Under the pieces are notes generated by a model. That model was not told the DNA's origin. It saw only the letters and a list, made by a program, of their open reading frames with translations, and did no database searches. Shown here piece by piece: positions 1 to 16,112 of a stretch of DNA of 16,112 bases (positions are counted from its first letter, which is position 1; each line of letters starts with the position of its first letter). This DNA is from Octopus sinensis (Eukaryota). Where the stretch lies: assembly GCF_006345805.1 (NCBI RefSeq), contig NW_021825261.1, forward strand, positions 1 to 16,112, read 5' to 3'. The position numbers and the translations under genes are program-made.

Positions 1-218
1 GCTGGATCTCTTCCTGTCAGGTGTCCCAGATGAACCAACTTCACGGCAGGAGGGGCAGATGAGGGCAGCTGCATAGAACTCTCTCATGCACCAAATGGCA
101 GTTGCTAGAAAGCTTTCGTGAAGTGAAACCAAGTAGCAACACCAAATGGCGGTGCCCCAGCATGGCCACAGCTCATAAGCTGAAACTAGAATCAATCAAT
201 CAATCAATCAATCAATCA
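1..218 (+). mobile_element. 3' end of CR1-group LINE (LINE-A copy 1), runs off window start
   Basis: Frame from nt 2 reads LDLFLSGVPDEPTSRQEGQMRAAA*NSLMHQMAVARKLS*, matching the ORF2 C-terminus of the copies at 2748-3893 and 10407-12801. Premature TAG at 74-76 (TCG in the other copies), normal stop 119-121, short 3' UTR, then (ATCA)7 tail at 191-218. Confidence 0.93.
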
Positions 219-319
219 TATATATATATATATATGTACATATATATATATATATATGTATATATGTACATATATATATATATATATGTATATATATGTA
301 CATATATATATATATATAT
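219..319. repeat. (TA)n microsatellite with periodic TGTACA interruptions
   Basis: Directly visible; TGTACA recurs about every 30 nt. Confidence 0.97.
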
Positions 320-329
320 TTAAAAATTG

Positions 330-385
330 AGGGAGATAAATTAATATTAATTTTAATATCAATTTAAAACCAGTAGTCCAGCATT
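330..385 (+). repeat. Unclassified dispersed repeat fragment (second copy at 7478-7537)
   Basis: AGGGAGATAAATTAATATTAATTTTAATATCAATTTAAAACCAGTAGTCCAGCAT aligns with AGGGTGAAAAATTGAATATTAATTTGATTAATATGAATTGAAAACCAGTGGTGTAGCAT at 7478-7537. Confidence 0.55.
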
Positions 386-429
386 CAAAAAATCTGAGGA
401 TGCAGAGAAAATTCATATATATATGTATA

Positions 430-621
430 TTGGCAGGGCTGGCCTGCTAGGTAGCCGGCCAGAATGCTAGAAAAAGATCATCAACGATCAAACTACAAGG
501 GAAATTCTCTAGAGGAAGAATACAAGCGATTTTCTTCCTCTAGAAATTTCCCTTGTAGTTTGATCGTTGATGATCTTTTTCTAGCATTCTGGCCGGCTAC
601 CTAGCAGGCCAGCCCTGCCAA
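430..621. mobile_element. Near-perfect palindrome, MITE/foldback-like element in a TA context
   Basis: Arms 415-520 and 532-636 are reverse complements apart from a single 1-nt indel; loop is 11 nt (521-531, TACAAGCGATT). The core TTGGCAGGGC...GCCCTGCCAA is flanked by TA on both sides (428-429, 622-623), compatible with a TA target duplication. The hairpin is certain; the MITE label is inference. Confidence 0.65.
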
Positions 622-690
622 TATACATATATATATTATATATTATATATATAATATATATGTACATATATATATAATATAATATATATA

Positions 691-896: not shown

Positions 897-2173
897 CTTT
901 GATACTTTGATAGTTTGATAGGTTTCGGCCATTATTGGCCCAGGCCATGTCTAACTTCATAGCACCACCTGGTGAAGTCTTTCAAGTCAGAATTTGGGCA
1001 CTATGGCCCACTCAAGTAGAGAGTTATTGTTTACAGAGACATATCCGGGTGTAGGGGGTTTATCCGGGATTTCTTGAAGGAATCTGTCCAATGACTTCTT
1101 GAACCCTATAGGGTCAGTTTCTGTTTTAATTTGTTTGGTGTAATGTTAAAGAGAGCGGGGCCAATTGAGGTGAAATAATTGTGCGTATTGTTGTTATGAG
1201 ATGAGAGTGCGATTTTTGTTTTGGGCGGATGGCATGGGGCCCAAGCCTTGGATGTACCTTAAAGGTGATGCCAACATCATTTGGGCAATGCTGATGGAAT
1301 ATTTTCCACATCATGCAGATGATGTAGCGCTCACGACGACGTTGAGAGAATAAAGTTTTAGCTTTTCTAGTCGACCCCAATAGTCGAGGCCTGTCATGCC
1401 ATCTCTTTTTTTGTGATTGCCCTTTGAGGTGCTTCAACTTTTATGATACTTTGTATTGTGTGGGGAGACCACAGTGGACAACAGTATTCAAGGTGGGGGC
1501 GGGCAAAAGTGGAGAAGAGAAGGATAATGGTGTGGATATCTCTCGACTGGAAAGTTCTGAGAATCCAGGAACACATTCTGCGGGCCATGTCAACTTTGGT
1601 GTTTATATGAGTGGCCCAGCTTATGTTGTTGTCCACAATTACTCCCAAGTCTCTGATGTTGTTGGACGCCGCGAGAGTTTCACCTGAAGGAAGGGAGTAT
1701 CGGAGTTTCAGGGCATCCTCTTTTCTAAAGTGGATTAACTCAAATTTATCCTCGTTCAGCAGCATATTGTTTTTTTCTACCCATTGGATAACAGCCAGTA
1801 GATCTGACTGAAGGCATGTCCGGTCACTCGCCTCATTTATGACCTTCTGTAGCTTGGAATCATCTGCAAAGATTTTTATGTTGCTGTGCTTGATGATGTC
1901 ATTGATGTCATTAATGTAGATGATGAAAAGAATGGGCCCAGCACAGTGCCTTGCGGAACGCCACTACTGACTTTGGCTGGGCTTGATTTTACCCCTTCAA
2001 CTACAACATGTTGTGATCTGTCTGTCAGGAAACACTTGATCCATTTCAGTAAGTTTCCAGAGAAACCAATGTTGGATAGTTTTTTCAATAGGATCTTGTG
2101 ATCGACCCTGTCGAAGGCCTTACTGAAATCAAGGTAGATGACATCAGTGTTGGAGCCCTCTCCCAAAGCTCTC
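897..2173 (-). mobile_element. 5'-truncated, frameshifted CR1-group LINE (LINE-B, distinct from LINE-A)
   Basis: Minus-strand RT motifs DVIYLDFSKAFDRVDH, GVPQGTVLGP, FADD (1859-1870), RDLGVIVD, HLEYCCPLWSP, RRRERY and the C-terminus FKKSLDRFLQEIPDKPPTPGYVSVNNNSLLEW, with stop at 987-989. Several frameshifts. 3' tail of 8-nt units (TATCAAAG/C) at 897-920. Confidence 0.93.
987..2172 (-). pseudogene. LINE-B ORF2 remnant (RT domain and C-terminus), disrupted
   Basis: ORF-track pieces 1876..2193, 1394..1765 and 1126..1437 are consecutive fragments of one RT protein in different frames. Confidence 0.9.
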
Positions 2174-2209
2174 ATATATATATATATGTACATATATATA
2201 TATATATAT
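2174..2209. repeat. (TA)n microsatellite
   Basis: Directly visible, between LINE-B and an RTE tail. Confidence 0.95.
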
Positions 2210-2480: not shown

Positions 2481-2747
2481 CGTCTGGCACCTGTGTCGGT
2501 GGCACATAAAAAACACCATCCGAGCGTGGCCGTCTGCCAGCCTCGTCTGGCACCTGTGTCGGTGGCACATAAAATCACCCACTACACTCTCGGAGTGGTT
2601 GGCGTTAGGAAGGGCATCCAGCTGTAGAAACACTGCCACATCTGACTGGCCTGGTGCAGCCTTCGGGCTTCCCAGACCCCAGTTGAACCGTCCAACCCAT
2701 GCTAGCATGGAAAGCGGACGTTAAACGATGATGATGATGATGATGAT
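2481..2747 (+). mobile_element. RTE LINE 3'-end fragment (copy 2)
   Basis: Very close reverse complement of the 9156-9420 copy; ends GAAAGCGGACGTTAAAC(GAT)7; 5' end starts inside a hairpin repeat unit. Confidence 0.9.
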
Positions 2748-3807
2748 CTGAAAGATAGAAGTCAGGTGGTAGTAGCCAATGGGGCCACTTCCATTAACAC
2801 GCAAATAGTGAGCGGGCACTGTTTTGGGACCACTACTGTTCATAATGGCCCTCTCAGACACGCCCTCAGCCATGCAGAGAGCCACGATCACAAATTATGC
2901 AGATGATACAAAAGTTTCACAGGCAATACAGAACCCTGAGGACACTAAACGCCTGCAATGTGAGCTGGACAAAATATACAAGTGGGCTGAAAAGAATAGC
3001 ATGCAGTTCAATGCTGAAAAGTTTCAAGCTTTATACTATCAGCATGCAAAACTAAATGCAATACCCAATGAATACACTGGACCCGGAGGAATTGCAATCC
3101 CAGAGGCACAATCAGTGCGTGACCTGGGTATTTACATGAGTGATGACGCAACCTTTCGTGTACATGTTGCTAAATTGGCAATGAAATGTAGACAACTGGC
3201 CGGATGGATTCTCAGAACCTTTAGAACAAGAGAACAAGAAACCATGATGGTCCTCTGGAGGACACTTGTCCTAAGCCACTTTGACTATTGCTCTCAGCTA
3301 TGGTCACCATCTAGTGTCAAGTTGATCACAGAACTTGAGGCGATCCAACGTAGCTACACGAAGAAGATAGCCTCTATGCAGAATATAAGCTACTGGGAAA
3401 GATTCAAGAGATTAAAACTCTATTCCTTGGAGCGTAGGCAAGAAAGATATGCCATAATATACATCTGGAATATCCTGGAGGGACTTGTCCCAAACTTTGG
3501 CATCAAGAGTCACACAAATGCCAGAACTGGGCGCCACTGCGTGGTTCCTAGGACTCCAAATTTGCCATCAAGATGTAGGACAAGATACTGTGATAGCCTG
3601 GGCTTCCGAGGCATACACCTCTTCAATATCCTCCCGAAGAACCTAAGAGACCTGCATGGGATGGATGCAGATGTCTTTAAAATGAAACTGGATCTCTTCC
3701 TGTCAGGTATCCCAGATGAACCAACTTCACGGCAGGAGGTGCAGATGAGGGCAGCTGCATCGAACTCTCTCATGCACCAAATGGCAGTTGCTAAAAAGCA
3801 TTCGTGA
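2748..3807 (+). pseudogene. LINE-A ORF2 remnant (second half of RT and C-terminus)
   Basis: Open from 2824 to 3807, but an 11-bp deletion relative to copy 3 (near 2811) removes the GVPQ motif and shifts the frame; no N-terminal half. Confidence 0.92.
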
Positions 3808-3893
3808 GGTAAAATCATGTAGCAAACCAAATGGCTGTGCCCCAGCATGGCCACAGCTCATGAGCTGAAACTGGAAAAATCAAAATCAAAATC
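2748..3893 (+). mobile_element. 5'-truncated CR1-group LINE (LINE-A copy 2)
   Basis: Begins at LKDRSQVVVANG. YADD at 2896-2907, RDLG, SHFDYCSQLWSP, LYSLERRQERY, stop 3805-3807, 3' UTR, (AAAATC)3 tail to 3893. About 93% amino-acid identity to copy 3 by manual count (23 differences in ~320 aa). Confidence 0.95.
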
Positions 3894-3920
3894 ATATACA
3901 TATATATATACATCTGTATG

Positions 3921-3952
<32 letters not shown>

Positions 3953-4099
3953 CATATATATATGTATGTATATATACACACACACACATACATACACACA
4001 CACAGACACATACATAGATAGATACATACATATAATACATGAATATGTCATACATACATACATACATACATACATACAAACAAACAAACAAACAAACAA
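3894..4099. repeat. Compound microsatellite (TA)n/(CA)n/(TACA)n/(CAAA)n
   Basis: Directly visible. Confidence 0.96.
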
Positions 4100-4495: not shown

Positions 4496-4698
4496 CAGAA
4501 ATGTTAGCACGCCAAGCGAAATACTTTGTGGTATTTCATCTGTCTTAACTTTCTGAGTTCAAATTCCACCAAAGTCTTTGCCTTTCATCCTTTTGGGGTC
4601 GATAAATTAAGTACCAGTTGCATCCTTGGATTGATGTAATAGACTGGCCTCCCCATAAAAAATTCCGGGCCTTGTGCCTACAGTGGAAATGAATATTT
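4496..4698 (+). mobile_element. tRNA-derived SINE, degenerate (second copy at 10082-10214)
   Basis: B-box-like GAGTTCAAATTCC at 4555-4567, central TTTGCCTTTCATCCTTTTGGGGTCGATAAATTAAGTACC, 3' GGCCTTGTGCCTACAGTGGAAA; the central and 3' blocks recur at 10082-10214. Family name not assigned. Confidence 0.75.
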
Positions 4699-5072
4699 AA
4701 GACGATGGAGTTTTGTGGCAAATGACTGCCCCAGTAGAATGAAAATATAGCAAATGCGGGCTAGGATTGAAACAGGAGTTGTAGTGAGAAGCAACCGAAG
4801 AGGTATGCGGAAACTTGTTTGGATTTGGTTTGAGAGAATCTCTGAATAAACAGATTTTCTTTTTTTTTCGGTTCTTTATTAATTGATATAATACACCATA
4901 CATACATACAGATATAGTATACATTTCATACATATACACACACATATACAATACCTGTATACATTGATAAATGCAGGGTGGGAGGGACAGATTCAGAGTT
5001 TGAAATGCCATGTGGTTTTTAGCGAAATCAGAATAATTTCTTATCATCGAAAACATGGGAATTATTTATCCA

Positions 5073-5338
5073 AGATTTCCCAACAGGTTTCCTATTAAAT
5101 GAAGCCGCTTTAGTAAAAGGTTACTCTGTAATGTTTGTTGATCACGGAAATATATTTACACGTTACTTCACCTTTTTTACTGCGATTCATTTTCAGTCTT
5201 AATTTTATTGCTTTTATTTTGATTTTTTGGGTGTGGCGTTAAAAGGCCGTAACATGACACATGGGTTTTTGTTTAGATGTTTTCTTTCTCACTTTCCCTT
5301 CTTTCTTTCTCTCTCTCTCTCTCCCCTCTCCCCCGACT

Positions 5339-5397
<59 letters not shown>

Positions 5398-5649
5398 GGC
5401 TTATCCTTTTTATTGGTCTACAAAAGTGTGCCCTCTTCCACCAACTATCTACTTCACATCCTCATAGGAAAGGAATCTGAAAACAAAAATGCATGGAAAG
5501 CAATGGGTAGTAGGGACTTCGGAAAATTCACAAGGTCCCAGTTCTTCCCTTGTAACTTTGAGGAAAATATAATACTTTTGAAATCACAAATTAGACTTTT
5601 CCTCAAGAACTTGGTTGCTGAACATCCCTTTGAAGGGTTTGGGTCCTCC

Positions 5650-5655
<6 letters not shown>
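5073..5655 (+). repeat. Left arm of a long inverted repeat, with internal (CT)n; unclassified
   Basis: Reverse complement of 7898-8455; 13 differences outside the (CT)n tract by manual alignment. Confidence 0.95.
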
Positions 5656-5894: not shown

Positions 5895-6715
5895 TTATAA
5901 CACCTCGTTGTAAACAATGTTCCTTGTTTTTCCTTGTGGAGCATATACAAAAAGGTTTCTTTTGGTTCCTACTCTTGAGCAGCCAACATACAGTTGCCTA
6001 TGCGAGAAGCAGGACTCTTCCAAGAGAAAACCAGCTACAGAGAGGGTTTGACCCTGAGATTTGTTAATGGACATGGCAAAGCTGAATCGAAGGGGGAATT
6101 GCAGTCTTCTGAATGTAAATGGAATTTCTGCTCCTGATGGAGTAAGAGGAAATCTTGGAATAAAGACGTCATCACTTTTTCCACCTCCAGAAAGAATGAA
6201 TGCCTCGATAACGTGTGATATCATTTTCTTTATCACCAGTCGTGTTCCATTGCAAAGTCTTGGTGGTTCCAGATTGCAGAGTAGCATTACAGGAGTTCCA
6301 ACTTTAAGTCGTAATATGTGCGGAGGTAGTCGAGGAGGCTCCAGTGAATTGAGAAATTCAGGAGGATAGTTCACAACTATCTGGAATTGTATCAACAGAC
6401 TTGTAAGTCTGTATAGTGCCAGGAAGAGAATACATTAGCTGTTGATTAATTTTGTTAACAGCGACGTTTTTTGGAGCTAATATTGCTCTTTCACACAGCC
6501 AATTTTGATTTTGGTAGTTTTGTGTGAAGTTGGGAAAGACTTTGTTTTTGAGGTCATCTACAGAATTAACAACATTGCTGATATTCTCCATGTGAGGATA
6601 GAGCAGTTGAGCTTGGCGCTGAAGGGGACAATGTTTTTGAGATTCCGGTTCGAATATAAGGCAGGTTTGAAAGTGTTCCCAACAGTTATTAGTTGTAGTG
6701 GTAGAGTGTTTATGC
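5895..6715 (-). pseudogene. Helitron RepHel C-terminal PIF1-family helicase fragment
   Basis: WLCERAILAPKNVAVNKIN, then after a frameshift near 6390 [33 protein letters not shown]...LCNGTRL...[21 protein letters not shown]...[13 protein letters not shown]...[10 protein letters not shown], the characteristic Helitron helicase C-terminus; stop 5895-5897. Confidence 0.93.
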
Positions 6716-6774: not shown

Positions 6775-6886
6775 CACTGGTCTGAAGCTAGAGCAGAAGA
6801 CACATGCCAAGTCACCACACAGTGGGACTGAACCCAAGACCATGTGTTTGGAACGTAGTTTGTTACCACACAGCCACACCTGCCCC
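6775..6886 (-). mobile_element. tRNA-related SINE head (same family as 8523-8895), nested in the Helitron interval
   Basis: Minus strand: A-box-like TGGCTGTGTGG (6866-6876), B-box GGTTCAGTCCC (6824-6834), followed by ACTGTGTGG as in the 8523 copy. Confidence 0.8.
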
Positions 6887-7897: not shown

Positions 7898-8153
7898 ATA
7901 GTAGAAGGACCCAAACCCTTCAAAAGGATGTTCAGCAACCAAGTTCTTGAGGAAAAGTCTAATTTGTGATTTCAAAAGTATTATATTTTCCTCAAAGTTA
8001 CAAGGGAAGAACTGGGACCTTGTGAATTTTCCGAAGTCCCTACTACCCATTGCTTTCCATGCATTTTTGTTTTCAGATTCCTTTCCTATGAGGATGTGAA
8101 GTAGATAGTTGGTGGAAGAGGGCACACTTTTGTAGACCAATAAAAAGGATAAG

Positions 8154-8189
<36 letters not shown>

Positions 8190-8455
8190 GAGTCGGGGGA
8201 GAGGGGAGAGAGAGAGAGAAAGAAAGAAGGGAAAGTGAGAAAGAAAACATCTAAACAAAAACCCATGTGTCATGTTATGGCCTTTTAACGCCACACCCAA
8301 GAAATCAAAATGAAAGCAATAAAATTAAGACTGAAAATGAATCAGAGTAAAAAAATATGACGTAACGTGTAAATATATTTCCGTAATCAACAAACATTAC
8401 AGAGTAACCTTTTACTAAAGCGGCTTCAATTAATAGGAAACCTGTTGGGAAATCT
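7898..8455 (-). repeat. Right arm of the long inverted repeat, with internal (GA)n
   Basis: Reverse complement of 5073-5655. Confidence 0.95.
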
Positions 8456-8522: not shown

Positions 8523-8895
8523 GTGATAAGTAGCTTGTTTACCAACCACATGGTTCCAGGTTCAGTCCCACTGTGTGGCACCTTGGGCAAGTGTCTTCTA
8601 CTATAGCCTTGGGCTAACCAAAGCCTTGTGAGTGGGTTTGGTAGACGGAAACTGAAAGAAGCCCATCGTATATATGTATATATATATGCGTGTGTGTGTT
8701 TGTCCCTCTAGCATTGCTTCACAACCAATGCTGGTGTGTTTATGTCCCCCTTACTTAGCGGTTCGGCAAAAGAGCCCGTTAGAATAAGTACTGGGCTTTC
8801 AAAAGAATAAGTCCCGGGGTCGTGTTGCTCAATTAAAGGCGGTGCTCCAGCATGGCCGCAGTCAACTGACTGAAACAAGTAAAGGAGTAAAAGAG
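8523..8895 (+). mobile_element. tRNA-derived SINE with CORE-like motif, internal microsatellite and LINE-A-like 3' end
   Basis: B-box GGTTCAGTCCC at 8559-8569; ACCTTGGGCAAGT (CORE-like) at 8580-8592; internal TA/TG tract; 3' GGCGGTGCTCCAGCATGGCCGCAGTCAACTGACTGAAAC at 8838-8876; short purine-rich repeat tail. The A-box end of the head is clipped. Confidence 0.85.
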
Positions 8896-8896
8896 G

Positions 8897-9106
8897 GTAT
8901 ATATACATATATATATATATACATATATATATATGTGTATATATATATATATACATATATATATGTACATATATATATATGTATATATATATACATATAT
9001 ATATACATATATATATATATGTATATATATATATACATATAATATATATACATATATATATATACACACACATATATATATACACAACACACACATATAT
9101 ATATAT

Positions 9107-9145
<39 letters not shown>

Positions 9146-9155
9146 TACATATATA
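8897..9155. repeat. Long interrupted (TA)n/(TACA)n/(CA)n microsatellite
   Basis: Directly visible. Confidence 0.97.
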
Positions 9156-9600
9156 CATCATCATCATCATTTAGAGTCCGTTTTCCATGCTAGCATGGGT
9201 TGGACGGTTCAACTGGGGTCTGGCAAGCCCGAAGGCTGCACCAGGCCAGTCAGATCTGGCAGTGTTTCTACAGCTGGATGCCCTTCCTAACGCCAACCAC
9301 TCCGAGAGTGTAGTGGGTGATTTTATGTGCCACCGACACAGGTGCCAGACGAGGCTGGCGAACGGCCACGCTCGGATGGTGTTTTTCATGTGCCACCGAC
9401 ACAGGTGCCAGATGAGGCTGGCAGACGGCCACGCTCGGATGGTGTTTTTATGTGCCACCGACACAGGTGCCAGATGAGGCTGGCGAACGGCCACGATCGG
9501 ATGGTGTTTGTTACGTGCCCACAGCACGGAGGCCAGTCGATGCGGTACTGGCTACGGCCACGTTCGGATGGTTTTCTTGTGTGCCACTGGCACTGGTACC
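9156..9600 (-). mobile_element. RTE LINE 3'-end fragment (copy 3) with about 4.5 tandem ~62-bp hairpin units
   Basis: (CAT)5 at 9156-9170, the conserved terminal block, then tandem units from 9321; homologous to 14298-14830. Confidence 0.9.
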
Positions 9601-9684: not shown

Positions 9685-9966
9685 GGAGGCGCAATGGCCT
9701 GTGGTTAGGGCAGCGGACTTGCGATTGTAGGATCGTGGTTTCGATTCCCAGGCCGGGTGTTGTGTTTATTGAGCGAAAACACCTAAAACTCCACGAGGCT
9801 CCGGCAGGGAGTGGTGGTGATCCCTGCTGTACTCTTTCGCCGCAACTTTCTCTCACTCTTTCTTCTGTTAGCCTGCTCACTTAGCCAGTGGGGTAGCATC
9901 ATTTGAAGGCTAAAACAATGCGAAGTGCATTGTGACCAGCCATGTGATAGCTGGATGGTCACGGTG
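9685..9966 (+). mobile_element. tRNA-derived SINE, third family in the window
   Basis: Head GGAGGCGCAATGGCCTGTGGTTAGGGCAGCGGACT with A-box-like 9695-9706 and B-box GGTTTCGATTCCC at 9737-9749, followed by ~200 nt of non-tRNA body; flanked by TA microsatellites. May correspond to one of the published octopus tRNA-derived SINE families (OK/OR1/OR2); not verified. Confidence 0.8.
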
Positions 9967-10070
9967 ATATATATATATATACATACACACACATCTATCT
10001 ATCTATATATATAGATACACACACATCTATCTATCTATATATATACATACACACATATATATATATATAT
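9967..10070. repeat. Compound (TA)n/(CA)n/(TCTA)n microsatellite
   Basis: Directly visible. Confidence 0.93.
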
Positions 10071-10081
10071 TTAGTCAGTTA

Positions 10082-10214
10082 GTCTTTACATTCTGTGGTT
10101 AAATTCTGCCTAGGTTGAATTTGCCTTTTCATCCTTTCTGGGTTTATAAAATAAGTACTGGATTCATCCTCTCCCCCAGATTTTCAGGCCTTGTGTTTAC
10201 AGTAGAAAGGATTA
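10082..10214 (+). mobile_element. Degenerate SINE fragment (same family as 4496-4698)
   Basis: TTTGCCTTTTCATCCTTTCTGGGTTTATAAAATAAGTAC and GGCCTTGTGTTTACAGTAGAAAGGATTA match the 4496 copy. Confidence 0.7.
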
Positions 10215-10406: not shown

Positions 10407-12801
10407 GATTGATTGATTGATTCTAGTTTCAGCTTATGAGCTGTGGCCATGCTGGGGCACCGCCATTTGGTGTTGCTACTTGGTTTTACTTCACGAAAGC
10501 TTTTTAGCAACTGCCATTTGGTGCATGAGAGAGTTCGATGCAGCTGCCCTCATCTGCACCTCCTGCCGTGAAGTTGGTTCATCTGGGACACCTGACAGGA
10601 AGAGATCCAGTTTCATTTTAAAGACATCTGCATCCACCCCATGCAGGTCTCTCAGGTTCTTCGGGAGGATATTGAAGAGCTGTGGGCCACGGAAGCCCAG
10701 GCTATCACAGAATCTTGTCCTACATCTTGATGGCAAACTTGGAGTCCTAGGCACCACGCAGTGGCGCCCAGTTCTGGCATTTGCGTAACTCTCGATGCCA
10801 AAGTTTAGGACACGTCCCTCCAGGATCTTCCAGATGTATATTATGGCATATCTTTCCCGCCTACGCTCCAAGGAATATAGTTTTAATCTCTTGAGTCTTT
10901 CCCAGTAGCTTACATTCTGCATAGAGGCTATCTTCTTTGTGTAGCTGCGTTGGATCGCCTCGAGCTCTGTGATCAACTTGACACTGGATGGTGACCATAA
11001 CTGAGAGCAGTAGTCAAAGTGGCTTAGGACAAGTGTTCGCCAGATGACCATCATGGTTTCTTGTTCTCTTGTTCTAAAGGTTCTGAGGATCCATCCGGCC
11101 AGTCGTCTACATTTCATTGCCAATTTAGCAACATGTACACGAAAGGTTGCGTCATCACTCATGTAAATACCCAGGTCACGCACTGATTGTGCCTCTGGGA
11201 TTGCTATTCCTCCAGGTCCAGTGTATTCATTGGGTATTGCATTTAGTTTTGCATGCTGATAGTATAAAGCTTGAAACTTTTCAGAAATTGAACTGCATGC
11301 TATTCTTTTCAGCCCACTTGTATATTTTGTCCAGCTCACATTGCAGGTGTTTAGTGTCCTCAGGGTTCTGTATTGCCTGTGAAACTTTTGTATCATCTGC
11401 ATAACTTGTGATCGTGGCTCTCTGCGTGGCTGAGGGCATGTCTGAGAGGGCCATTATGAACAGTAGTGGTCCTAGAACAGTGCCCTGCGGAACACCGCTC
11501 ACTATTTGCGTGTTAATGGAAGTTAATTGGCTACTACCACCTGACTTCTATCTTTCAGAAAGTCATGAAGCCATTCTCCCAGTTTTCCAACTATGTTGAG
11601 ATCACGCAGTTTGTGACATATCATTCCATGATCGACTTTATCAAAGGCCTTTGCAAAGTCGAGATATATCACTTCCACATCTGAGTGGTTGAGCAGCTGT
11701 TTCAGCATCCAGTCATAGTGCTGCAGGAGCTGAGTTAAACAGCTTCTCCCTGGTCGGAAACCATGTTGGGTGTCGGGCAGCAAGTCATTCTCTTCAAGGA
11801 AGGTGATCAGTTTCCTACTGACTATTCGTTCTATGACCTTGCTGATGTGTGAGGTCAGAGAGATAGGTCTGTAGTTCTTGGCCTCTGCTCTGCTACCTCC
11901 TTTATGAATGGGGCATATTTTACCTTCCTTCAGTTTTTTTGGAAGTTTGCCAGCTGCAAGGAAGCTCTGAAAGAGGAACTGCAGTGGTCTTGCTAGGACT
12001 CTCTTACATGCTTTTAGGAGGATTGCCGGGAATCCATCGGGGCCAGTAGCTGAGTCTGTTTTCATTTCATCTATAGCCTTGATTACATCGTCTTCCTTTA
12101 TATCGATGTAATTTATCGTCGCCGCCTCTGATTTTATATCTGCAGTGGTAAAGAAGTCAGTTGGATTGGTGATTTGGAGATGCCCAAGCTGTGGAGTGAA
12201 AACACTCTTGAATTGCTCATTCAGTATTTCACTTACCCTCATTGGTTTTCCTGTAAGTGTGCCATCCTTTTCAAGGAGTGGCCCTATTCTACAGTGCACT
12301 GTAGCTGTTTCTTTGGCATACCTGTAGAAAGCTCTGGGGTTAGATTTTATGTTGTCTATAGCCCAGGCTTCTTTGTCTGCTCTTTCTTTTTCATGGGAGA
12401 GTTGCAGACATTTTTCAATTTCCAACAGTTTTATTTTTAGGCGGGACTTTTCACTGCTTTCAATCTGTTTGTTTAGGCGATTTGAAATTTTTGTACGCCG
12501 TCTCATTAAAATTTTCCTCTCTCTGGGGATTTTGTTCTTGTGTACAGTGGCCTTTCTCTCTGGGACGCATTTGTTGCATATGGCTTGCATTACAGACATG
12601 AATTGTTGAAGTTTCACGTCGATGTCTGGCGAGGAGAGACATTTAGGCCAGTTTTGTTTCAGGATCTCTTTCTCAATTTGTTTCCAGTTTGCCTTATGGT
12701 AGTTCAAGCTGGAAAGATTCTGAGGGTTTCTTGTAGGCTGCATGTCCGTGCTCTCTTTTGGCCCGTACATGGTCAGCTCTACCATGTTGTGATCCGAGAG
12801 T
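10407..12801 (-). mobile_element. 5'-truncated CR1-group LINE (LINE-A copy 3), 2.4 kb
   Basis: (GATT)4 at 10407-10422 is an (AATC)4 tail on minus; 3' UTR; ORF2 from LSDHNMVEL (end of the APE endonuclease domain) through the linker and RT (YRPISLTS, QHGFRPGRSC, YLDFAKAFDKVDH, GVPQGTVLGP, YADD at 11392-11403) to the stop at 10491-10493. No target-site duplication seen. Confidence 0.96.
10491..12800 (-). pseudogene. LINE-A ORF2 (post-endonuclease linker, RT, C-terminus), two frameshifts
   Basis: Three in-order fragments (11523..12785, 11281..11520, 10491..11281). Lesions relative to copy 2: GGGGCC replaced by TA near 11525 (stop plus shift) and +1 nt near 11286. Confidence 0.94.
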
Positions 12802-13691: not shown

Positions 13692-14473
13692 CAGAAATTC
13701 AAAAGAGTTTTTGTTGAAAAAACACACCAAAAATGGGTGGTGTACTCCTTCTTTACCTTTGCCAAATTTCATGGTTTTAACAGGTGTAGCGTTTATCTTT
13801 ACTTTAAAAAAGTGTGGTTGTTTGCTTGTTTGGAATCTCCATCATCGAAAACAGGAATCCTGTGCAAATAAAAATAATCAGAAAGGTTGGTAACTGTGCA
13901 CCAGGTCTGCCATAAAAATACATGGTGGGTGCACACATATTAATGGCAGTAGGTTTGAAAATTAGTAAACGGGGCAAAATGAGTAACTTCTGATTTCTTA
14001 TTTTCTTCCTCCCTGTGTGAATTCCCTTACTTTGTAAGCATTGCATCACCATTTTGTATTGCTACATGATACTTGGGGATACAAACTGGTTGTTGAAGTT
14101 GTGGAAGTACAAAGCATAGTCAAAGGGCAGGGCCCCTTTTTTTTTGTCAAGAAATTTCTCTTCAACTTTGACCCAATTGTAATTGAGAATGCTAATAAAA
14201 TATCTGGATAATTTTTCATGCTAAACAATCAATATTGATTTCTTTGCTGGATTTCAAGTCAATTTTTCCCCACACTAATGTCTAATTTGATAATCTTCAT
14301 CATCATCATCATCATCATCATTTAGCGTCCGTTTTCCATGCTAGCATGGGTTGGACGGTTTAACTGGGGTCTGTGAAGCCGGAAGGCTTCACCAGGCCCA
14401 GTCAGATTTGGCAGTGTTTCTACAACTGGATGCCCTTCCTAACGCCAACCACTCCGCGAGTGTAGTGGGTGTT

Positions 14474-14830
14474 TTTTACCGGCCACCTGCACAGGTGCCA
14501 GACAGAGCTGGCAAACGGCCATGAACGGACAGTGCTTTTACGTGTCACCGGCACGGGGGCCAGCCGAGGCTGGCAACGAACACGAACGGATGGTGCTTTT
14601 ACGTGCCACCAACACGGGGCCAGACAGAGCTGGCAAACGGCCACGAACGGACGGTGCTTTTACGTGTCACCGGCACGGGGGCCAGCCGAGGCTGGCAACG
14701 AACACGAACGGATGGTGCTTTTACGTGCCACTGACACGGGGCCAGACAGAGCTGGCAAACGGCCACGAGCGAATGGTGCTTTTACGTATCACCGACATGG
14801 GTGCCAGACGAGGCTGGCAGCGGACACGGA
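14474..14830. repeat. Tandem array of six 61-62-bp GC-rich hairpin units, alternating A/B
   Basis: Unit starts (TTTTAC) at 14474, 14536, 14597, 14658, 14719, 14780; units 2 and 4 are identical. Confidence 0.95.
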
Positions 14831-14854
14831 TATATGATTTGATTTTGATTGTTC

Positions 14855-16111
14855 TCACTGGTCTTGCCGGGTCTTCTCACGCACAGCATACTTCCACAGG
14901 TCTCGGTCCCTGGTCATTTCCTTGGTGAGACCTAGAGTTCGAAGGTCGTGCTTCACCACCTCGACCCAGGTTTTCCTGGGTCTACCTCTTCCACAGGTCC
15001 CCTCAACTGCCAGGGTGTGGCACTTTTTCACACACCTATCTTCGTCCATTCTTGCCACATGACCATCCCAGCGCAATCGTCTCTCTTGCACACAACATCT
15101 GATGCCTCTTAGGTCCAACTTTTCTCTCAAGGTACTTACACTCTGTCGACTATGAACTCTGATATTACACATCCAACGGAGCATACTAGCTTCATTTCTT
15201 GCGAGCTTACGTAAATCCTCAGCAGTCACAGCCCAAGTTTCACTACCATGTAGCATGGCTGTACGTACACATGCATCATACAGTCTGCCTTTTACTTTGA
15301 GCGAGAGACCGTTTGTCACCAGTAGGGGTAAGAGCTCTCTAAACTTTGCCCAGGCTATTCTTACTCTAGCAGTTACACTTTCAGCACACCCGCCCCCGCT
15401 ACTGACTTGGTCACCTAGGTAGCGGAAGCTATCAACTACTTCTAGTTTTTCTCCTTGAAACATGATAGAAGATGGTCTCTGAATATTTTCAGAGTTTATT
15501 GCTCCTGAGCATCTGCCACAGATAAAAACTATTTTCCTAGTTAGTCTTCCTTTGACATTACTACATCTCTTATGTGTCCATAGCTTACATTTGGTGCATC
15601 TTATAGAGTTTCTACCTACGCCTTTTCTACAGATCGAGCAAGGCCATCTACCTGAAGGTGTTTGTGATTGGTCTACCTTCCTACTTATTAGGACGTTGGT
15701 TTTGGCTAGGTTGATTCTAAGGCCCTTCGATTCTAAACCTTGCTTCCACACCTGAAACTTCTCCTCCAGTCCTGATAGAGACTCAGCAATTAGAGCAAGG
15801 TCATCAGCATAGAGGAGCTCCCAGGGGCATTCAGTCTTGAATTCCTCCGTTATTGCCTGGAGGACTATGATAAATAGGAGGGGGCTGAGGACTGAACCTT
15901 GGTGAACCCCAACCTCTACCCTGAATTCTTCACTGTACTCGATGTCAACCCTCACCTTACTAGCAGCGTCTCTGTACATGGCTTGTACAGCTCTCACTAA
16001 CCATTCATCTATCCCTAGTTTCCTCATTGACCACCAGATAAGGGATCGGGGGACCCTGTCGAAGGCTTTCTCCATATCGACAAAAGCCAGGTATAGGGGT
16101 TTGTCTTTGGC
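14855..16111 (-). CDS. RTE LINE reverse transcriptase, partial, with embedded PHD-type zinc finger
   Basis: Uninterrupted frame from the window edge (AKDKPLYLAFVDMEKAF...) to the stop at 14855-14857; YADD at 15800-15811; C4HC3 pattern at 15509-15640. The ATG at 16075 is internal, not the true start. Confidence 0.92.
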   Translation of the reverse strand, partial: AKDKPLYLAFVDMEKAFDRVPRSLIWWSMRKLGIDEWLVRAVQAMYRDAASKVRVDIEYSEEFRVEVGVHQGSVLSPLLFIIVLQAITEEFKTECPWELLYADDLALIAESLSGLEEKFQVWKQGLESKGLRINLAKTNVLISRKVDQSQTPSGRWPCSICRKGVGRNSIRCTKCKLWTHKRCSNVKGRLTRKIVFICGRCSGAINSENIQRPSSIMFQGEKLEVVDSFRYLGDQVSSGGGCAESVTARVRIAWAKFRELLPLLVTNGLSLKVKGRLYDACVRTAMLHGSETWAVTAEDLRKLARNEASMLRWMCNIRVHSRQSVSTLREKLDLRGIRCCVQERRLRWDGHVARMDEDRCVKKCHTLAVEGTCGRGRPRKTWVEVVKHDLRTLGLTKEMTRDRDLWKYAVREKTRQDQ

Positions 16112-16112
16112 T

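What the first reader, a model, noticed from the sequence alone, without database searches (positions are those of the whole stretch)
8838..8876. SINE and LINE-A share a 3' end with a compensatorily mutated stem-loop: a candidate SINE-LINE partnership
Seen: SINE GGCGGTGCTCCAGCATGGCCG-CAGTC[AACT]GACTG-AAAC versus LINE-A GGCGGTGCCCCAGCATGGCCA-CAGCT[CATA]AGCTG-AAAC (148-186; also 3833-3871 and 10426-10464 on minus). 30 of 39 positions match; 7 of the 9 differences fall in the hairpin, where two base pairs switch together (CT:AG to TC:GA) and the loop varies. These are not CpG changes. Established: in stringent L2/CR1-group systems such as eel UnaL2/UnaSINE1, SINEs borrow a LINE 3' stem-loop for mobilisation. 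Inference: this SINE is mobilised by LINE-A or a relative, and structure rather than stem sequence is recognised. Whether this pair is already published I cannot determine.
Basis: partly seen in the sequence, partly recalled or inferred. Interest (0 to 1): 0.75.

Follow-up and report, generated by a model that had tools for sequence, protein, structure and literature searches.

The report
Octopus SINE borrowing a LINE tail
An abundant short octopus repeat (a tRNA/CORE-type SINE) ends in the same two-hairpin RNA tag as a family of CR1-like LINEs, the usual way a SINE hijacks a LINE's copying enzyme, and its likeliest helper is a sister LINE subfamily rather than the LINE-A copies in this window.

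Summary
SINE 8838-8876 matches the three LINE-A ends at 30, 29 and 30 of 39 positions. Two stem pairs are swapped compensatorily, and chance expectation for the shared 20-mer is 0.

The window is octopod DNA. The SINE (8523-8897) has a tRNA-like head, a CORE domain, an internal microsatellite, a body of about 150 nt and a LINE-type tail. Four copies from three genome contexts share this layout. LINE-A is an APE/RT LINE without RNase H or poly(A), so it is CR1-like.

The tag is larger than reported:
- a first hairpin with a YCCA tetraloop and a 1x1 mismatch
- a second hairpin directly after it
- GAAAC
- short tandem repeats

The same architecture recurs, with strong covariation, in at least 13 distinct marine-metagenome LINE relatives among the 80 fetched.

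Other octopod LINE subfamilies match the SINE better. An O. sinensis copy scores 35/39, with the identical second stem, the same UCCA loop and similar (ARTAAAAG)n repeats. A metagenome copy scores 34/39. LINE-A instead carries (AATC)n repeats.

So the family-level partnership is supported. The compensatory difference reflects divergence between LINE subfamilies, not tolerance shown by this pair. This is a new member of a known kind, of moderate interest.

The parts
8523..8897 (+). One copy of a composite SINE of about 380 bp, slightly 5'-truncated. It has a tRNA-like head with A/B-box-like motifs, a CORE-like domain, an internal (TA)n(TG)n microsatellite, a body of about 150 nt and a LINE-type tail.
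   Evidence: 89% identical over its whole length to a copy in O. vulgaris (L003 1153-1536). It aligns with two O. sinensis copies, and the junction TAAAGGCGG is conserved in all four. ARAGORN and Rfam do not call a tRNA, so the head is assigned by eye.
8837..8858 (+). SINE tail hairpin 1: GGC / G / GUGC [UCCA] GCAU / G / GCC, i.e. outer stem, 1x1 G-G mismatch, inner stem and tetraloop.
   Evidence: RNAfold, CM R1 hit of 66.7 bits, pair counts.
8859..8872 (+). SINE tail hairpin 2: CAGUC [AACU] GACUG.
   Evidence: RNAfold. This helix is 100% paired across 9 distinct octopod tails, and 2 of its 5 pairs change on both sides.
8873..8897 (+). AAAC spacer plus terminal repeats AAGTAAAGGAGTAAAAGAGGG, about (AGTAAAAG)n, followed by a (TA)n microsatellite.
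   Evidence: Read directly. The same repeat type is seen in other SINE copies and in the L002, L005 and L087 LINE tails.
1..218 (+). LINE-A copy 1, cut by the window start. End of ORF2, hairpin 1 at 147-168, hairpin 2 at 169-182, GAAAC, then (AATC)n at 190-218.
   Evidence: CM R1 hit of 64 bits. 98% identical to copy 3.
2747..3894 (+). LINE-A copy 2, 5'-truncated. C-terminal ORF2 at 2824-3807, tail at 3832-3871, (AAAATC)n-like repeats at 3872-3894.
   Evidence: ORF list, weak RVT_1 hit, 94% identity to copy 3, CM hit of 61 bits.
10407..12800 (-). LINE-A copy 3, 5'-truncated with one frameshift. ORF pieces at 11523-12785 (RVT_1) and 10491-11402, tail at 10426-10465, (AATC)n at 10407-10425.
897..2193 (-). 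LINE-B, a second, more distant LINE with the same style of tail: a first hairpin, then GGCC[AAUAAU]GGCC, GAAAC and (TATCAAAG)n.
   Evidence: RVT_1 hit for ORF 1876-2193. CM R1 hit at 922-970 (minus strand), 18.1 bits, E 0.019. Fold.
6787..6851 (-). Fragment of the head/CORE part of a related SINE copy.
   Evidence: Self-BLAST: 82% identity to 8542-8607.

Best explanation
The element at 8523-8897 is a tRNA-headed CORE-type SINE of octopods. Its last 40-60 nt were captured from the 3' UTR end of a CR1-like LINE family that includes LINE-A.

The captured tag has four parts:
- hairpin 1, with a 1x1 mismatch and a YCCA tetraloop
- hairpin 2, directly adjacent
- GAAAC
- short tandem repeats

Proposed mechanism: a Pol III transcript of the SINE presents this tag, and the LINE's ORF2 protein (endonuclease plus reverse transcriptase) binds it in trans. 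Reverse transcription is primed on the terminal repeats at a nicked target (target-primed reverse transcription, probably with slippage on the repeats), and the SINE is copied into the genome.

The most likely helper is the LINE subfamily that shares the SINE's UCCA loop, its CAGUC/GACUG stem and its (ARTAAAAG)n repeats. It is represented by the O. sinensis copy in L005 and by L087 and L002. The LINE-A subfamily in this window is less likely.

Shown here: the shared tail, the fixed SINE architecture across copies and species, covariation of the tail stems, and copies 5'-truncated down to the tail alone. Inferred: protein binding, trans-mobilisation and the role of the repeats.
For: - Tail identity far above chance.
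- Four full SINE copies in the window, O. vulgaris and O. sinensis share one architecture and one SINE/tail junction. Tail-only fragments are present at L003 14503-14555 and L005 2098-2149.
- LINE tails sit 12-25 nt after the ORF2 stop at the homologous position in LINE-A, L001, L002, L005, L086 and L087.
- Identity to the SINE consensus tail is 30/39 for LINE-A, 31 for L002, 34 for L087 and 35 for L005. Terminal repeats match L002, L005 and L087 but not LINE-A.
- Octopod tails are 95.7% paired, with 3 pairs changed on both sides and hairpin 2 100% paired.
- Thirteen distinct marine-metagenome relatives fold by MFE into the same two-hairpin layout. For hairpin 1, 9 of 10 pairs show compensatory change, with a covariation score of 0.766 against 0.207 shuffled and at most 0.245 slid.
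- YCCA hairpins are enriched in the 3' UTRs: 13 observed against 1.4 expected.
- Full-length relatives carry APE (PF14529/PF03372) plus RVT_1 and no RNase H.
- A hairpin plus a microsatellite is the accepted CR1 recognition structure (PMC8665684). Stringent-type SINE/LINE tail sharing is established (PMC3747384).
Against: - Each LINE subfamily is represented by one to three decayed copies.
- Only six SINE tails were seen.
- The L005-type LINE was seen in O. sinensis, and its presence in the window's species is not shown.
- The L005 copy still differs from the SINE at 4 of 39 positions.
- The CR1 assignment rests on domain content, tail style and exclusion, not on an RT phylogeny with reference elements.
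- The inner 4 bp of hairpin 1 in the distant set were a selection criterion, so only the outer pairs and the enrichment test are unbiased.
Confidence: 0.75

Rival explanations
1. The LINE-A subfamily in this window itself mobilises the SINE because the enzyme reads hairpin shape and not stem sequence, so the swapped pairs are tolerated.
For: Hairpin 1 is nearly identical, both hairpins are kept, and GAAAC is shared. Stems covary freely across the clade while the YCCA loop is fixed, which suggests shape plus loop recognition. LINE-A copies are young, at 94-98% pairwise identity.
Against: LINE-A differs from the SINE in the hairpin-1 loop base, the junction base, two stem pairs and the hairpin-2 loop. 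It also differs completely in the terminal repeats, (AATC)n against (AGTAAAAG)n. Sister subfamilies match better on all of these. None of the six SINE tails carries the LINE-A stem or repeats.
Confidence: 0.15
2. The tail is a fossil. The SINE captured it from an ancestral LINE of this family long ago, both have since drifted, and no partnership is active now.
For: SINE copies are about 10% diverged from one another. The L005 LINE copy is frameshifted. All LINE-A copies in the window are 5'-truncated.
Against: The tail is the best-conserved part of the SINE copies. A 2026 O. vulgaris annotation reports recently active CR1 and SINE insertions (PMC13282606). This reading concerns timing and does not change what the tail is.
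Confidence: 0.08
3. Chance juxtaposition. A 5'-truncated LINE fragment landed next to an unrelated SINE, so there is no composite element.
For: 5'-truncated, tail-only fragments of this family do exist.
Against: The same junction (…GCTCGAYTAAAGGCGG…) and the same upstream 150-nt body occur in four copies at unrelated loci in three genome contexts.
Confidence: 0.02

Closest known systems
Eel UnaSINE1/UnaSINE2 with the UnaL2 LINE (stringent-type SINE/LINE pair; review PMC3747384)
   Same: A CORE-type, tRNA-headed SINE shares the last tens of nucleotides of a LINE 3' UTR. The shared part is a conserved stem-loop followed by short tandem repeats, (TGTAA)n in the eel. The presumed mechanism is trans-recognition by the LINE reverse transcriptase, with slippage on the repeats.
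   Different: UnaL2 is an L2-clade element with one functionally mapped hairpin, and its mobilisation has been shown experimentally. Here there are two adjacent hairpins, different repeats and a CR1-like LINE, and there is no experiment.
Amniote CR1 LINEs: 3' hairpin plus 8-mer microsatellite (ATTCTRTG)n as the proposed RT recognition site (PMC8665684, PMC4316615)
   Same: An APE+RT LINE without poly(A). The 3' end is a hairpin structure followed by a microsatellite of about 8 nt. The SINE, L002 and L087, Argonauta, and LINE-B all have 8-mer-like repeats.
   Different: The primary sequence is different. The architecture here is bipartite, with a YCCA-tetraloop hairpin carrying a 1x1 mismatch and then a second hairpin. 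LINE-A itself has 4- to 6-mer repeats. Clade membership was not tested by phylogeny.
Bivalve CORE, V, Deu and Meta SINEs partnered with CR1, CR1-Zenon, L2 and Nimb LINEs (PMC11481361, PMC4824008)
   Same: Mollusc tRNA-derived SINEs with conserved central domains whose tails share 35-61 bp (72-95% identity) with LINE 3' UTRs. Tails are exchanged in a mosaic fashion. Argonauta CORE-SINE copies keep the CORE domain but have a different tail.
   Different: Those studies cover bivalves. No cephalopod pair is listed there or in Table 1 of PMC3747384.
Octopus OR1/OR2/OK SINEs (Ohshima and Okada 1994, cited in PMC4758252 and PMC4824008) and the 'tRNA-Core' SINEs of octopus repeat annotations (PMC8967140)
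   Same: A tRNA-derived, CORE-containing SINE that is abundant in Octopus. The element here is very probably one of these or a close relative.
   Different: I could not obtain the OR1/OR2 consensus sequences, so identity is untested. The papers I could read name no LINE partner for them.

Membership tests
Stringent-type SINE/LINE pair (SINE with a LINE-derived tail) | The SINE 3' end is homologous to the extreme 3' UTR end of a LINE. | tested here: met
   29-35 of 39 nt identical to six LINE tails that lie 12-25 nt after the ORF2 stop. Chance expectation is 0.
Stringent-type SINE/LINE pair (SINE with a LINE-derived tail) | The SINE and its partner end in the same short tandem repeat. | tested here: inconclusive
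   Not met for the window's LINE-A, which has (AATC)n against (AGTAAAAG)n in the SINE. Approximately met for the L002, L005 and L087 LINEs: AGAGTAAAAGAGTA, AGAGTAAGAG and AATAAAAGAATA.
Stringent-type SINE/LINE pair (SINE with a LINE-derived tail) | A conserved stem-loop in the shared tail, maintained by compensatory change. | tested here: met
Stringent-type SINE/LINE pair (SINE with a LINE-derived tail) | The SINE has an internal Pol III promoter in a head derived from a small RNA. | tested here: inconclusive
   A-box-like TGGCTGTGTGG and B-box-like GGTTCAGTCCC are visible in the full copy L003 1153-1230. ARAGORN and the Rfam tRNA model give no call.
Stringent-type SINE/LINE pair (SINE with a LINE-derived tail) | The LINE protein mobilises the SINE in trans, dependent on the tail. 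| not testable with these tools
   Needs a retrotransposition assay.
CORE-SINE superfamily | Presence of the conserved CORE central domain downstream of the tRNA-like head. | not tested
   CACTGTGTGGCACCTTGGGCAAGT resembles the MIR/CORE motif as I recall it. A domain of about 90 nt is conserved at 84% between Octopus and Argonauta SINEs that have different tails. The literature says octopus SINEs are mainly tRNA-Core (PMC8967140). No CORE reference sequence was available for a direct alignment.
CR1-clade LINE (assignment of LINE-A) | ORF2 with an APE endonuclease and RT, and no RNase H domain. | tested here: met
   Window copies are 5'-truncated and show RVT_1 only. Longer relatives (about 620-730 aa) carry PF14529/PF03372 plus PF00078 and no RNase H.
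CR1-clade LINE (assignment of LINE-A) | 3' end made of a hairpin plus a microsatellite, with no poly(A). | tested here: met
   The definition follows PMC8665684.
CR1-clade LINE (assignment of LINE-A) | The RT domain groups with CR1 reference elements in a phylogeny, rather than with L2, Rex1, Daphne, Crack or Jockey. | not tested
   No labelled reference RT set was available. Indirect evidence only: the O. vulgaris annotation has CR1 as its only CR1/L2-group superfamily, and the C-terminal motifs DYCSQLWSP and LYSLERRRE resemble the CR1 pattern as I recall it.

The most novel reading that the evidence does not exclude
A widespread CR1-like LINE lineage of marine invertebrates uses one conserved bipartite RNA tag. 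The lineage includes octopods and many unidentified organisms behind metagenome contigs, and its named protein relatives come from crustaceans and hydrozoans. The tag is a hairpin with a 1x1 mismatch and an invariant YCCA tetraloop, a directly adjacent second hairpin, a GAAAC-like spacer and (N)AAGTA-type repeats. Recognition would depend on shape plus the loop, so an abundant octopus CORE-SINE could be cross-mobilised by several co-resident LINE subfamilies, including LINE-A. That could help explain the octopus-specific SINE expansion.
Probability: 0.25. Interest if true: 0.55.

Novelty: new member of a known kind. Interest (0 to 1): 0.35.

Why it matters
SINEs make up about 12% of the O. vulgaris genome by one recent annotation (PMC13282606). 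Most are unclassified, and the papers I could read name no LINE partner for them.

Tying a tRNA-CORE SINE to a specific CR1-like LINE family gives three things:
- a testable driver for part of the octopus SINE expansion
- a way to classify many 'unclassified' SINE families by their tail
- a compact, covariation-supported RNA motif, the YCCA-loop hairpin plus a second hairpin, for finding 3'-anchored copies of this LINE lineage in invertebrate genomes

The principle itself, SINEs sharing LINE tails with a conserved stem-loop, has been established since the 1990s.

Tried and rejected
- An exact-pattern scan for the tail in JGI metagenome contigs found 0 hits. The same kind of scan in viral contigs also found 0.
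- In GTDB genomes there was one hit, in Pseudomonas guariconensis (L004). I treat it as a chance match and ignore it.
- Rfam at gathering thresholds over the window, L003 and L005 gave nothing. A permissive Rfam search on the full SINE gave only noise and no tRNA. ARAGORN gave nothing.
- Sequence-string searches of the paper library returned only unrelated papers matching the short RNA string CAGCAUGGCC, and none of the tail strings themselves.
- Supplementary files of PMC11481361 (none held), PMC10294476 and PMC13282606 contained no tail or peptide motif that would label the LINE clade.
- Gilbert and Labuda 1999 and Albertin 2015 are not held.
- The window's own ORFs are not in the protein collection, so the source contig could not be extended. 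Only two named Octopus proteins gave loci (L003, L005), which limits the count to six SINE tails.
- My first figure of 41-43% amino-acid identity between the L005 LINE C-terminus and LINE-A was an artefact of frameshifts. Piecewise identity to family members is 58-73%.
- CM R1, built from octopod tails only, is too specific to align the distant relatives. Those were analysed by MFE folding and a fixed-window alignment instead.

Full report
**Observation**

The reported strings are at the reported coordinates. SINE 8838-8876 matches LINE-A at 148-186 and at 10426-10464 (minus strand) at 30/39 positions, and LINE-A at 3833-3871 at 29/39.

Seven of the nine differences lie in the hairpin. Four are stem bases forming two swapped pairs, and three are loop bases. 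The shared 20-mer, with up to 3 mismatches, occurs four times against 0.00 expected from shuffles.

RNAfold predicts the hairpin in all four copies. Two compensatory pairs between two sequences are weak evidence alone, so I looked for more relatives.

**What the elements are**

The window is TE-dense octopod DNA. The best named protein hits for a resident RTE-like LINE are from Octopus vulgaris and O. bimaculoides.

The SINE is one composite element of about 380 bp:
- An O. vulgaris locus (L003 1153-1536) holds a copy 89% identical over the whole length.
- An O. sinensis locus (L005) holds two more copies.
- All four show the same order: a tRNA-like head with A/B-box-like motifs, a domain of about 90 nt containing CCTTGGGCAAGT, an internal (TA)n(TG)n tract of variable length, a body of about 150 nt, the junction TAAAGGCGG, the tail and terminal (ARTAAAAG)n-like repeats.
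- The 90-nt domain is also present at about 84% identity in Argonauta SINE copies that carry a different tail. That fits the module-shuffling habit of CORE-SINEs.
- ARAGORN and Rfam do not call a tRNA.
- The literature describes octopus SINEs as mainly tRNA-Core and tRNA-Deu (PMC8967140) and names OR1 or OR2 as octopus CORE-SINEs (PMC4758252, PMC4824008).

LINE-A is present as three 5'-truncated copies, at 1-218, 2747-3894 and 10407-12800 (minus strand), which are 94-98% identical to each other. They encode RVT_1. Longer relatives carry an APE endonuclease plus RT and no RNase H. There is no poly(A).

That combination, with a hairpin-plus-microsatellite 3' end, is CR1-like (PMC8665684). CR1 is also the only CR1/L2-group superfamily listed in the O. 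vulgaris annotation. I could not run an RT phylogeny with labelled references.

**Relatives of the tail**

Protein searches and contig look-ups gave five more LINE tails of the family. The 39-nt cores and what follows them are shown below.

| Source | 39-nt core | Terminal repeats |
|---|---|---|
| SINE consensus | GGCGGTGCTCCAGCATGGCCGCAGTCAAATGACTGAAAC | AAGTAAAAGAGTAAAAGAG |
| L005, O. sinensis LINE | GGCGGTGCTCCAGCATGGCCACAGTCATTTGACTGAAAT | ATATAAGAGAGTAAGAGAATAT |
| L087, metagenome octopod LINE | GGCGGTGCTCCAGCATGGCCTCAGCCACTGGCTGAAAC | GGTTAAAAGAATAAAAGAATAT |
| L002, metagenome octopod LINE | GGCGGTGCCCCAGCATGGCCACAGCCTGCGGGCTGAAAC | AGAGTAAAAGAGTA(TA)n |
| LINE-A, window | GGCGGTGCCCCAGCATGGCCACAGCTCATAAGCTGAAAC | TAG(AATC)n |
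| L001, Argonauta hians (L086 similar) | GGTGGTGCACCAGCATGACCACAGCCGACTCGGCTGAAAC | (AAAACATT)n |

Identity to the SINE consensus is 35, 34, 31 and 30 of 39 for L005, L087, L002 and LINE-A.

The L005 tail lies about 12 nt beyond the expected ORF2 stop, and its upstream sequence is LINE rather than SINE. It is therefore that LINE's own tail. Piecewise, the L005 LINE is 58-73% identical in protein to other family members, so it is a sister subfamily.

The SINE shares its UCCA loop with L005 and L087, its second stem with L005, and its repeat type with L002, L005 and L087. It shares none of these with LINE-A.

**Structure**

Across nine distinct octopod tails, the two-hairpin structure is 95.7% paired. 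Three pairs change on both sides, and hairpin 2 is 100% paired. All slid controls are at or below 38.5% paired. The outer stem of hairpin 1 shows a C-G to U-A switch in Argonauta.

A metagenome scan with a protein profile returned 80 LINE relatives at 36-45% amino-acid identity. I folded 13 distinct ones, 12 with a YCCA-loop hairpin after ORF2 and L062 found by the covariance model:
- MFE folding gives the same layout each time: an outer stem, a 1x1 mismatch (absent in L053, 2x2 in L045), an inner stem and a four-base YCCA loop (three bases in L062).
- A second hairpin follows after 0-2 nt.
- Then come a GAAAC, GAAGC or UAAAGC spacer and tandem repeats, most of them ending in …AAGTAAGTA.

In a gap-free 24-column alignment centred on the loop:
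- 80.7% of cells pair, against 53.6% in shuffles.
- 9 of 10 pairs have double-sided changes.
- The covariation score is 0.766, against 0.207 shuffled and at most 0.245 slid.

The inner four pairs were a selection criterion. The outer pairs were not, and two of them pair in 15 of 15 sequences with GC/CG swaps.

YCCA hairpins with stems of at least 5 bp occur 13 times in the 3' UTR windows against 1.4 expected (P about 5e-9, with some redundancy between loci).

LINE-B in the window (897-2193, minus strand) has a variant of the same tail.

**Mechanism**

By analogy with UnaL2/UnaSINE1 and with the CR1 hairpin-plus-microsatellite model (PMC3747384, PMC8665684), the proposed sequence is:
1. The SINE's Pol III transcript presents the LINE tag.
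2. ORF2 protein binds the hairpins in trans.
3. Reverse transcription is primed on the terminal repeats at a nicked target.

Tail-only fragments at L003 14503-14555 and L005 2098-2149 fit 5' truncation during such events. Binding, trans-mobilisation and the role of the repeats are inferences.

**Comparison and novelty**

This is the standard stringent-type SINE/LINE relationship. CORE-SINEs with CR1, CR1-Zenon or L2 tails are already described in bivalves (PMC11481361).

I found no cephalopod pair in the SINE/LINE table of PMC3747384, in four octopus or cephalopod repeat papers (PMC13282606, PMC12988792, PMC8967140, PMC9115989), or by sequence-string search. Repbase, Dfam and SINEBase were not available.

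I therefore rate it a new member of a known kind. The conserved bipartite tag with an invariant YCCA loop may be new as a described motif, but it is an incremental addition to known LINE 3' structures.

**Caveats**

- Each LINE subfamily is represented by a few decayed copies, not by consensus sequences.
- Only six SINE tails were seen.
- The window's species is unidentified.
- The LINE clade is assigned indirectly.

Noticed in passing
window 14297-16112 (minus strand); also 2209-2747 and 9156-9596: An RTE-like LINE (ORF 14855-16075, RVT_1 plus a PHD-like finger, cut by the window end). Its 3' UTR is built of 61-63-nt tandem repeats and ends in (GAT)n. The same UTR/tail module occurs without an ORF at 9156-9596 and as a head-to-head inverted pair at 2209-2747, and several times in L003. 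These are either 5'-truncated copies or a second SINE-like parasite of an RTE.
   Followed up: partly
window 415-636: Perfect 92-nt inverted repeat (100% complementary) with a 38-nt spacer, embedded in (TA)n. It looks like a foldback or MITE-like element, or a very recent palindromic duplication.
   Followed up: partly
window 5073-5655 and 7898-8455: Inverted duplication of about 580 bp (93% identity) containing (CT)n. It brackets 2.2 kb that include a Pif1 2B-domain ORF (5895-6395, minus strand; Helitron-like) and a SINE head fragment. The SINE under study starts 70 bp after the right arm.
   Followed up: no
window 9685-9965; 4496-4700; 10070-10210: Further SINE-like repeats. One has a clear B-box-like GGTTTCGATTCCC (9685-9965). 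A second family at 4496-4700 and 10070-10210 shares an AATAAGTACYRG motif with the body of the SINE studied here, which hints at shared body modules.
   Followed up: no
L005 2040-2149: Two SINE tails lie tail-to-tail in inverted orientation and share the same private mutations (GGTGCCCCACCATGG). This looks like a local palindromic duplication or a twin-priming-like event, not two independent insertions.
   Followed up: no
window 187-330, 3895-4090, 8898-9160; L002 1773-1860: LINE-A, L002-LINE and SINE copies are very often followed directly by long (TA)n or (TATG)n microsatellites. This could reflect a target preference or microsatellite birth from the tail. It could also simply reflect how TA-rich this genome's microsatellites are.
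   Followed up: no
L006-L085 (marine metagenome contigs): Besides the YCCA group, a second group of relatives (for example L031, L038, L039, L041, L044, L054) shares a different conserved 3' UTR motif, about GGGARRAAAGCRCYCTGG, before (C)AAAGTA repeats. Most of these LINE relatives end in …AAGTAAGTA.
   Followed up: no
P0162: A protein 72% identical to the octopus RTE-like LINE is deposited as a 'Herbaspirillum sp.' MAG protein on a 1.5-kb contig. This is most likely animal DNA binned into a bacterial MAG.
   Followed up: no
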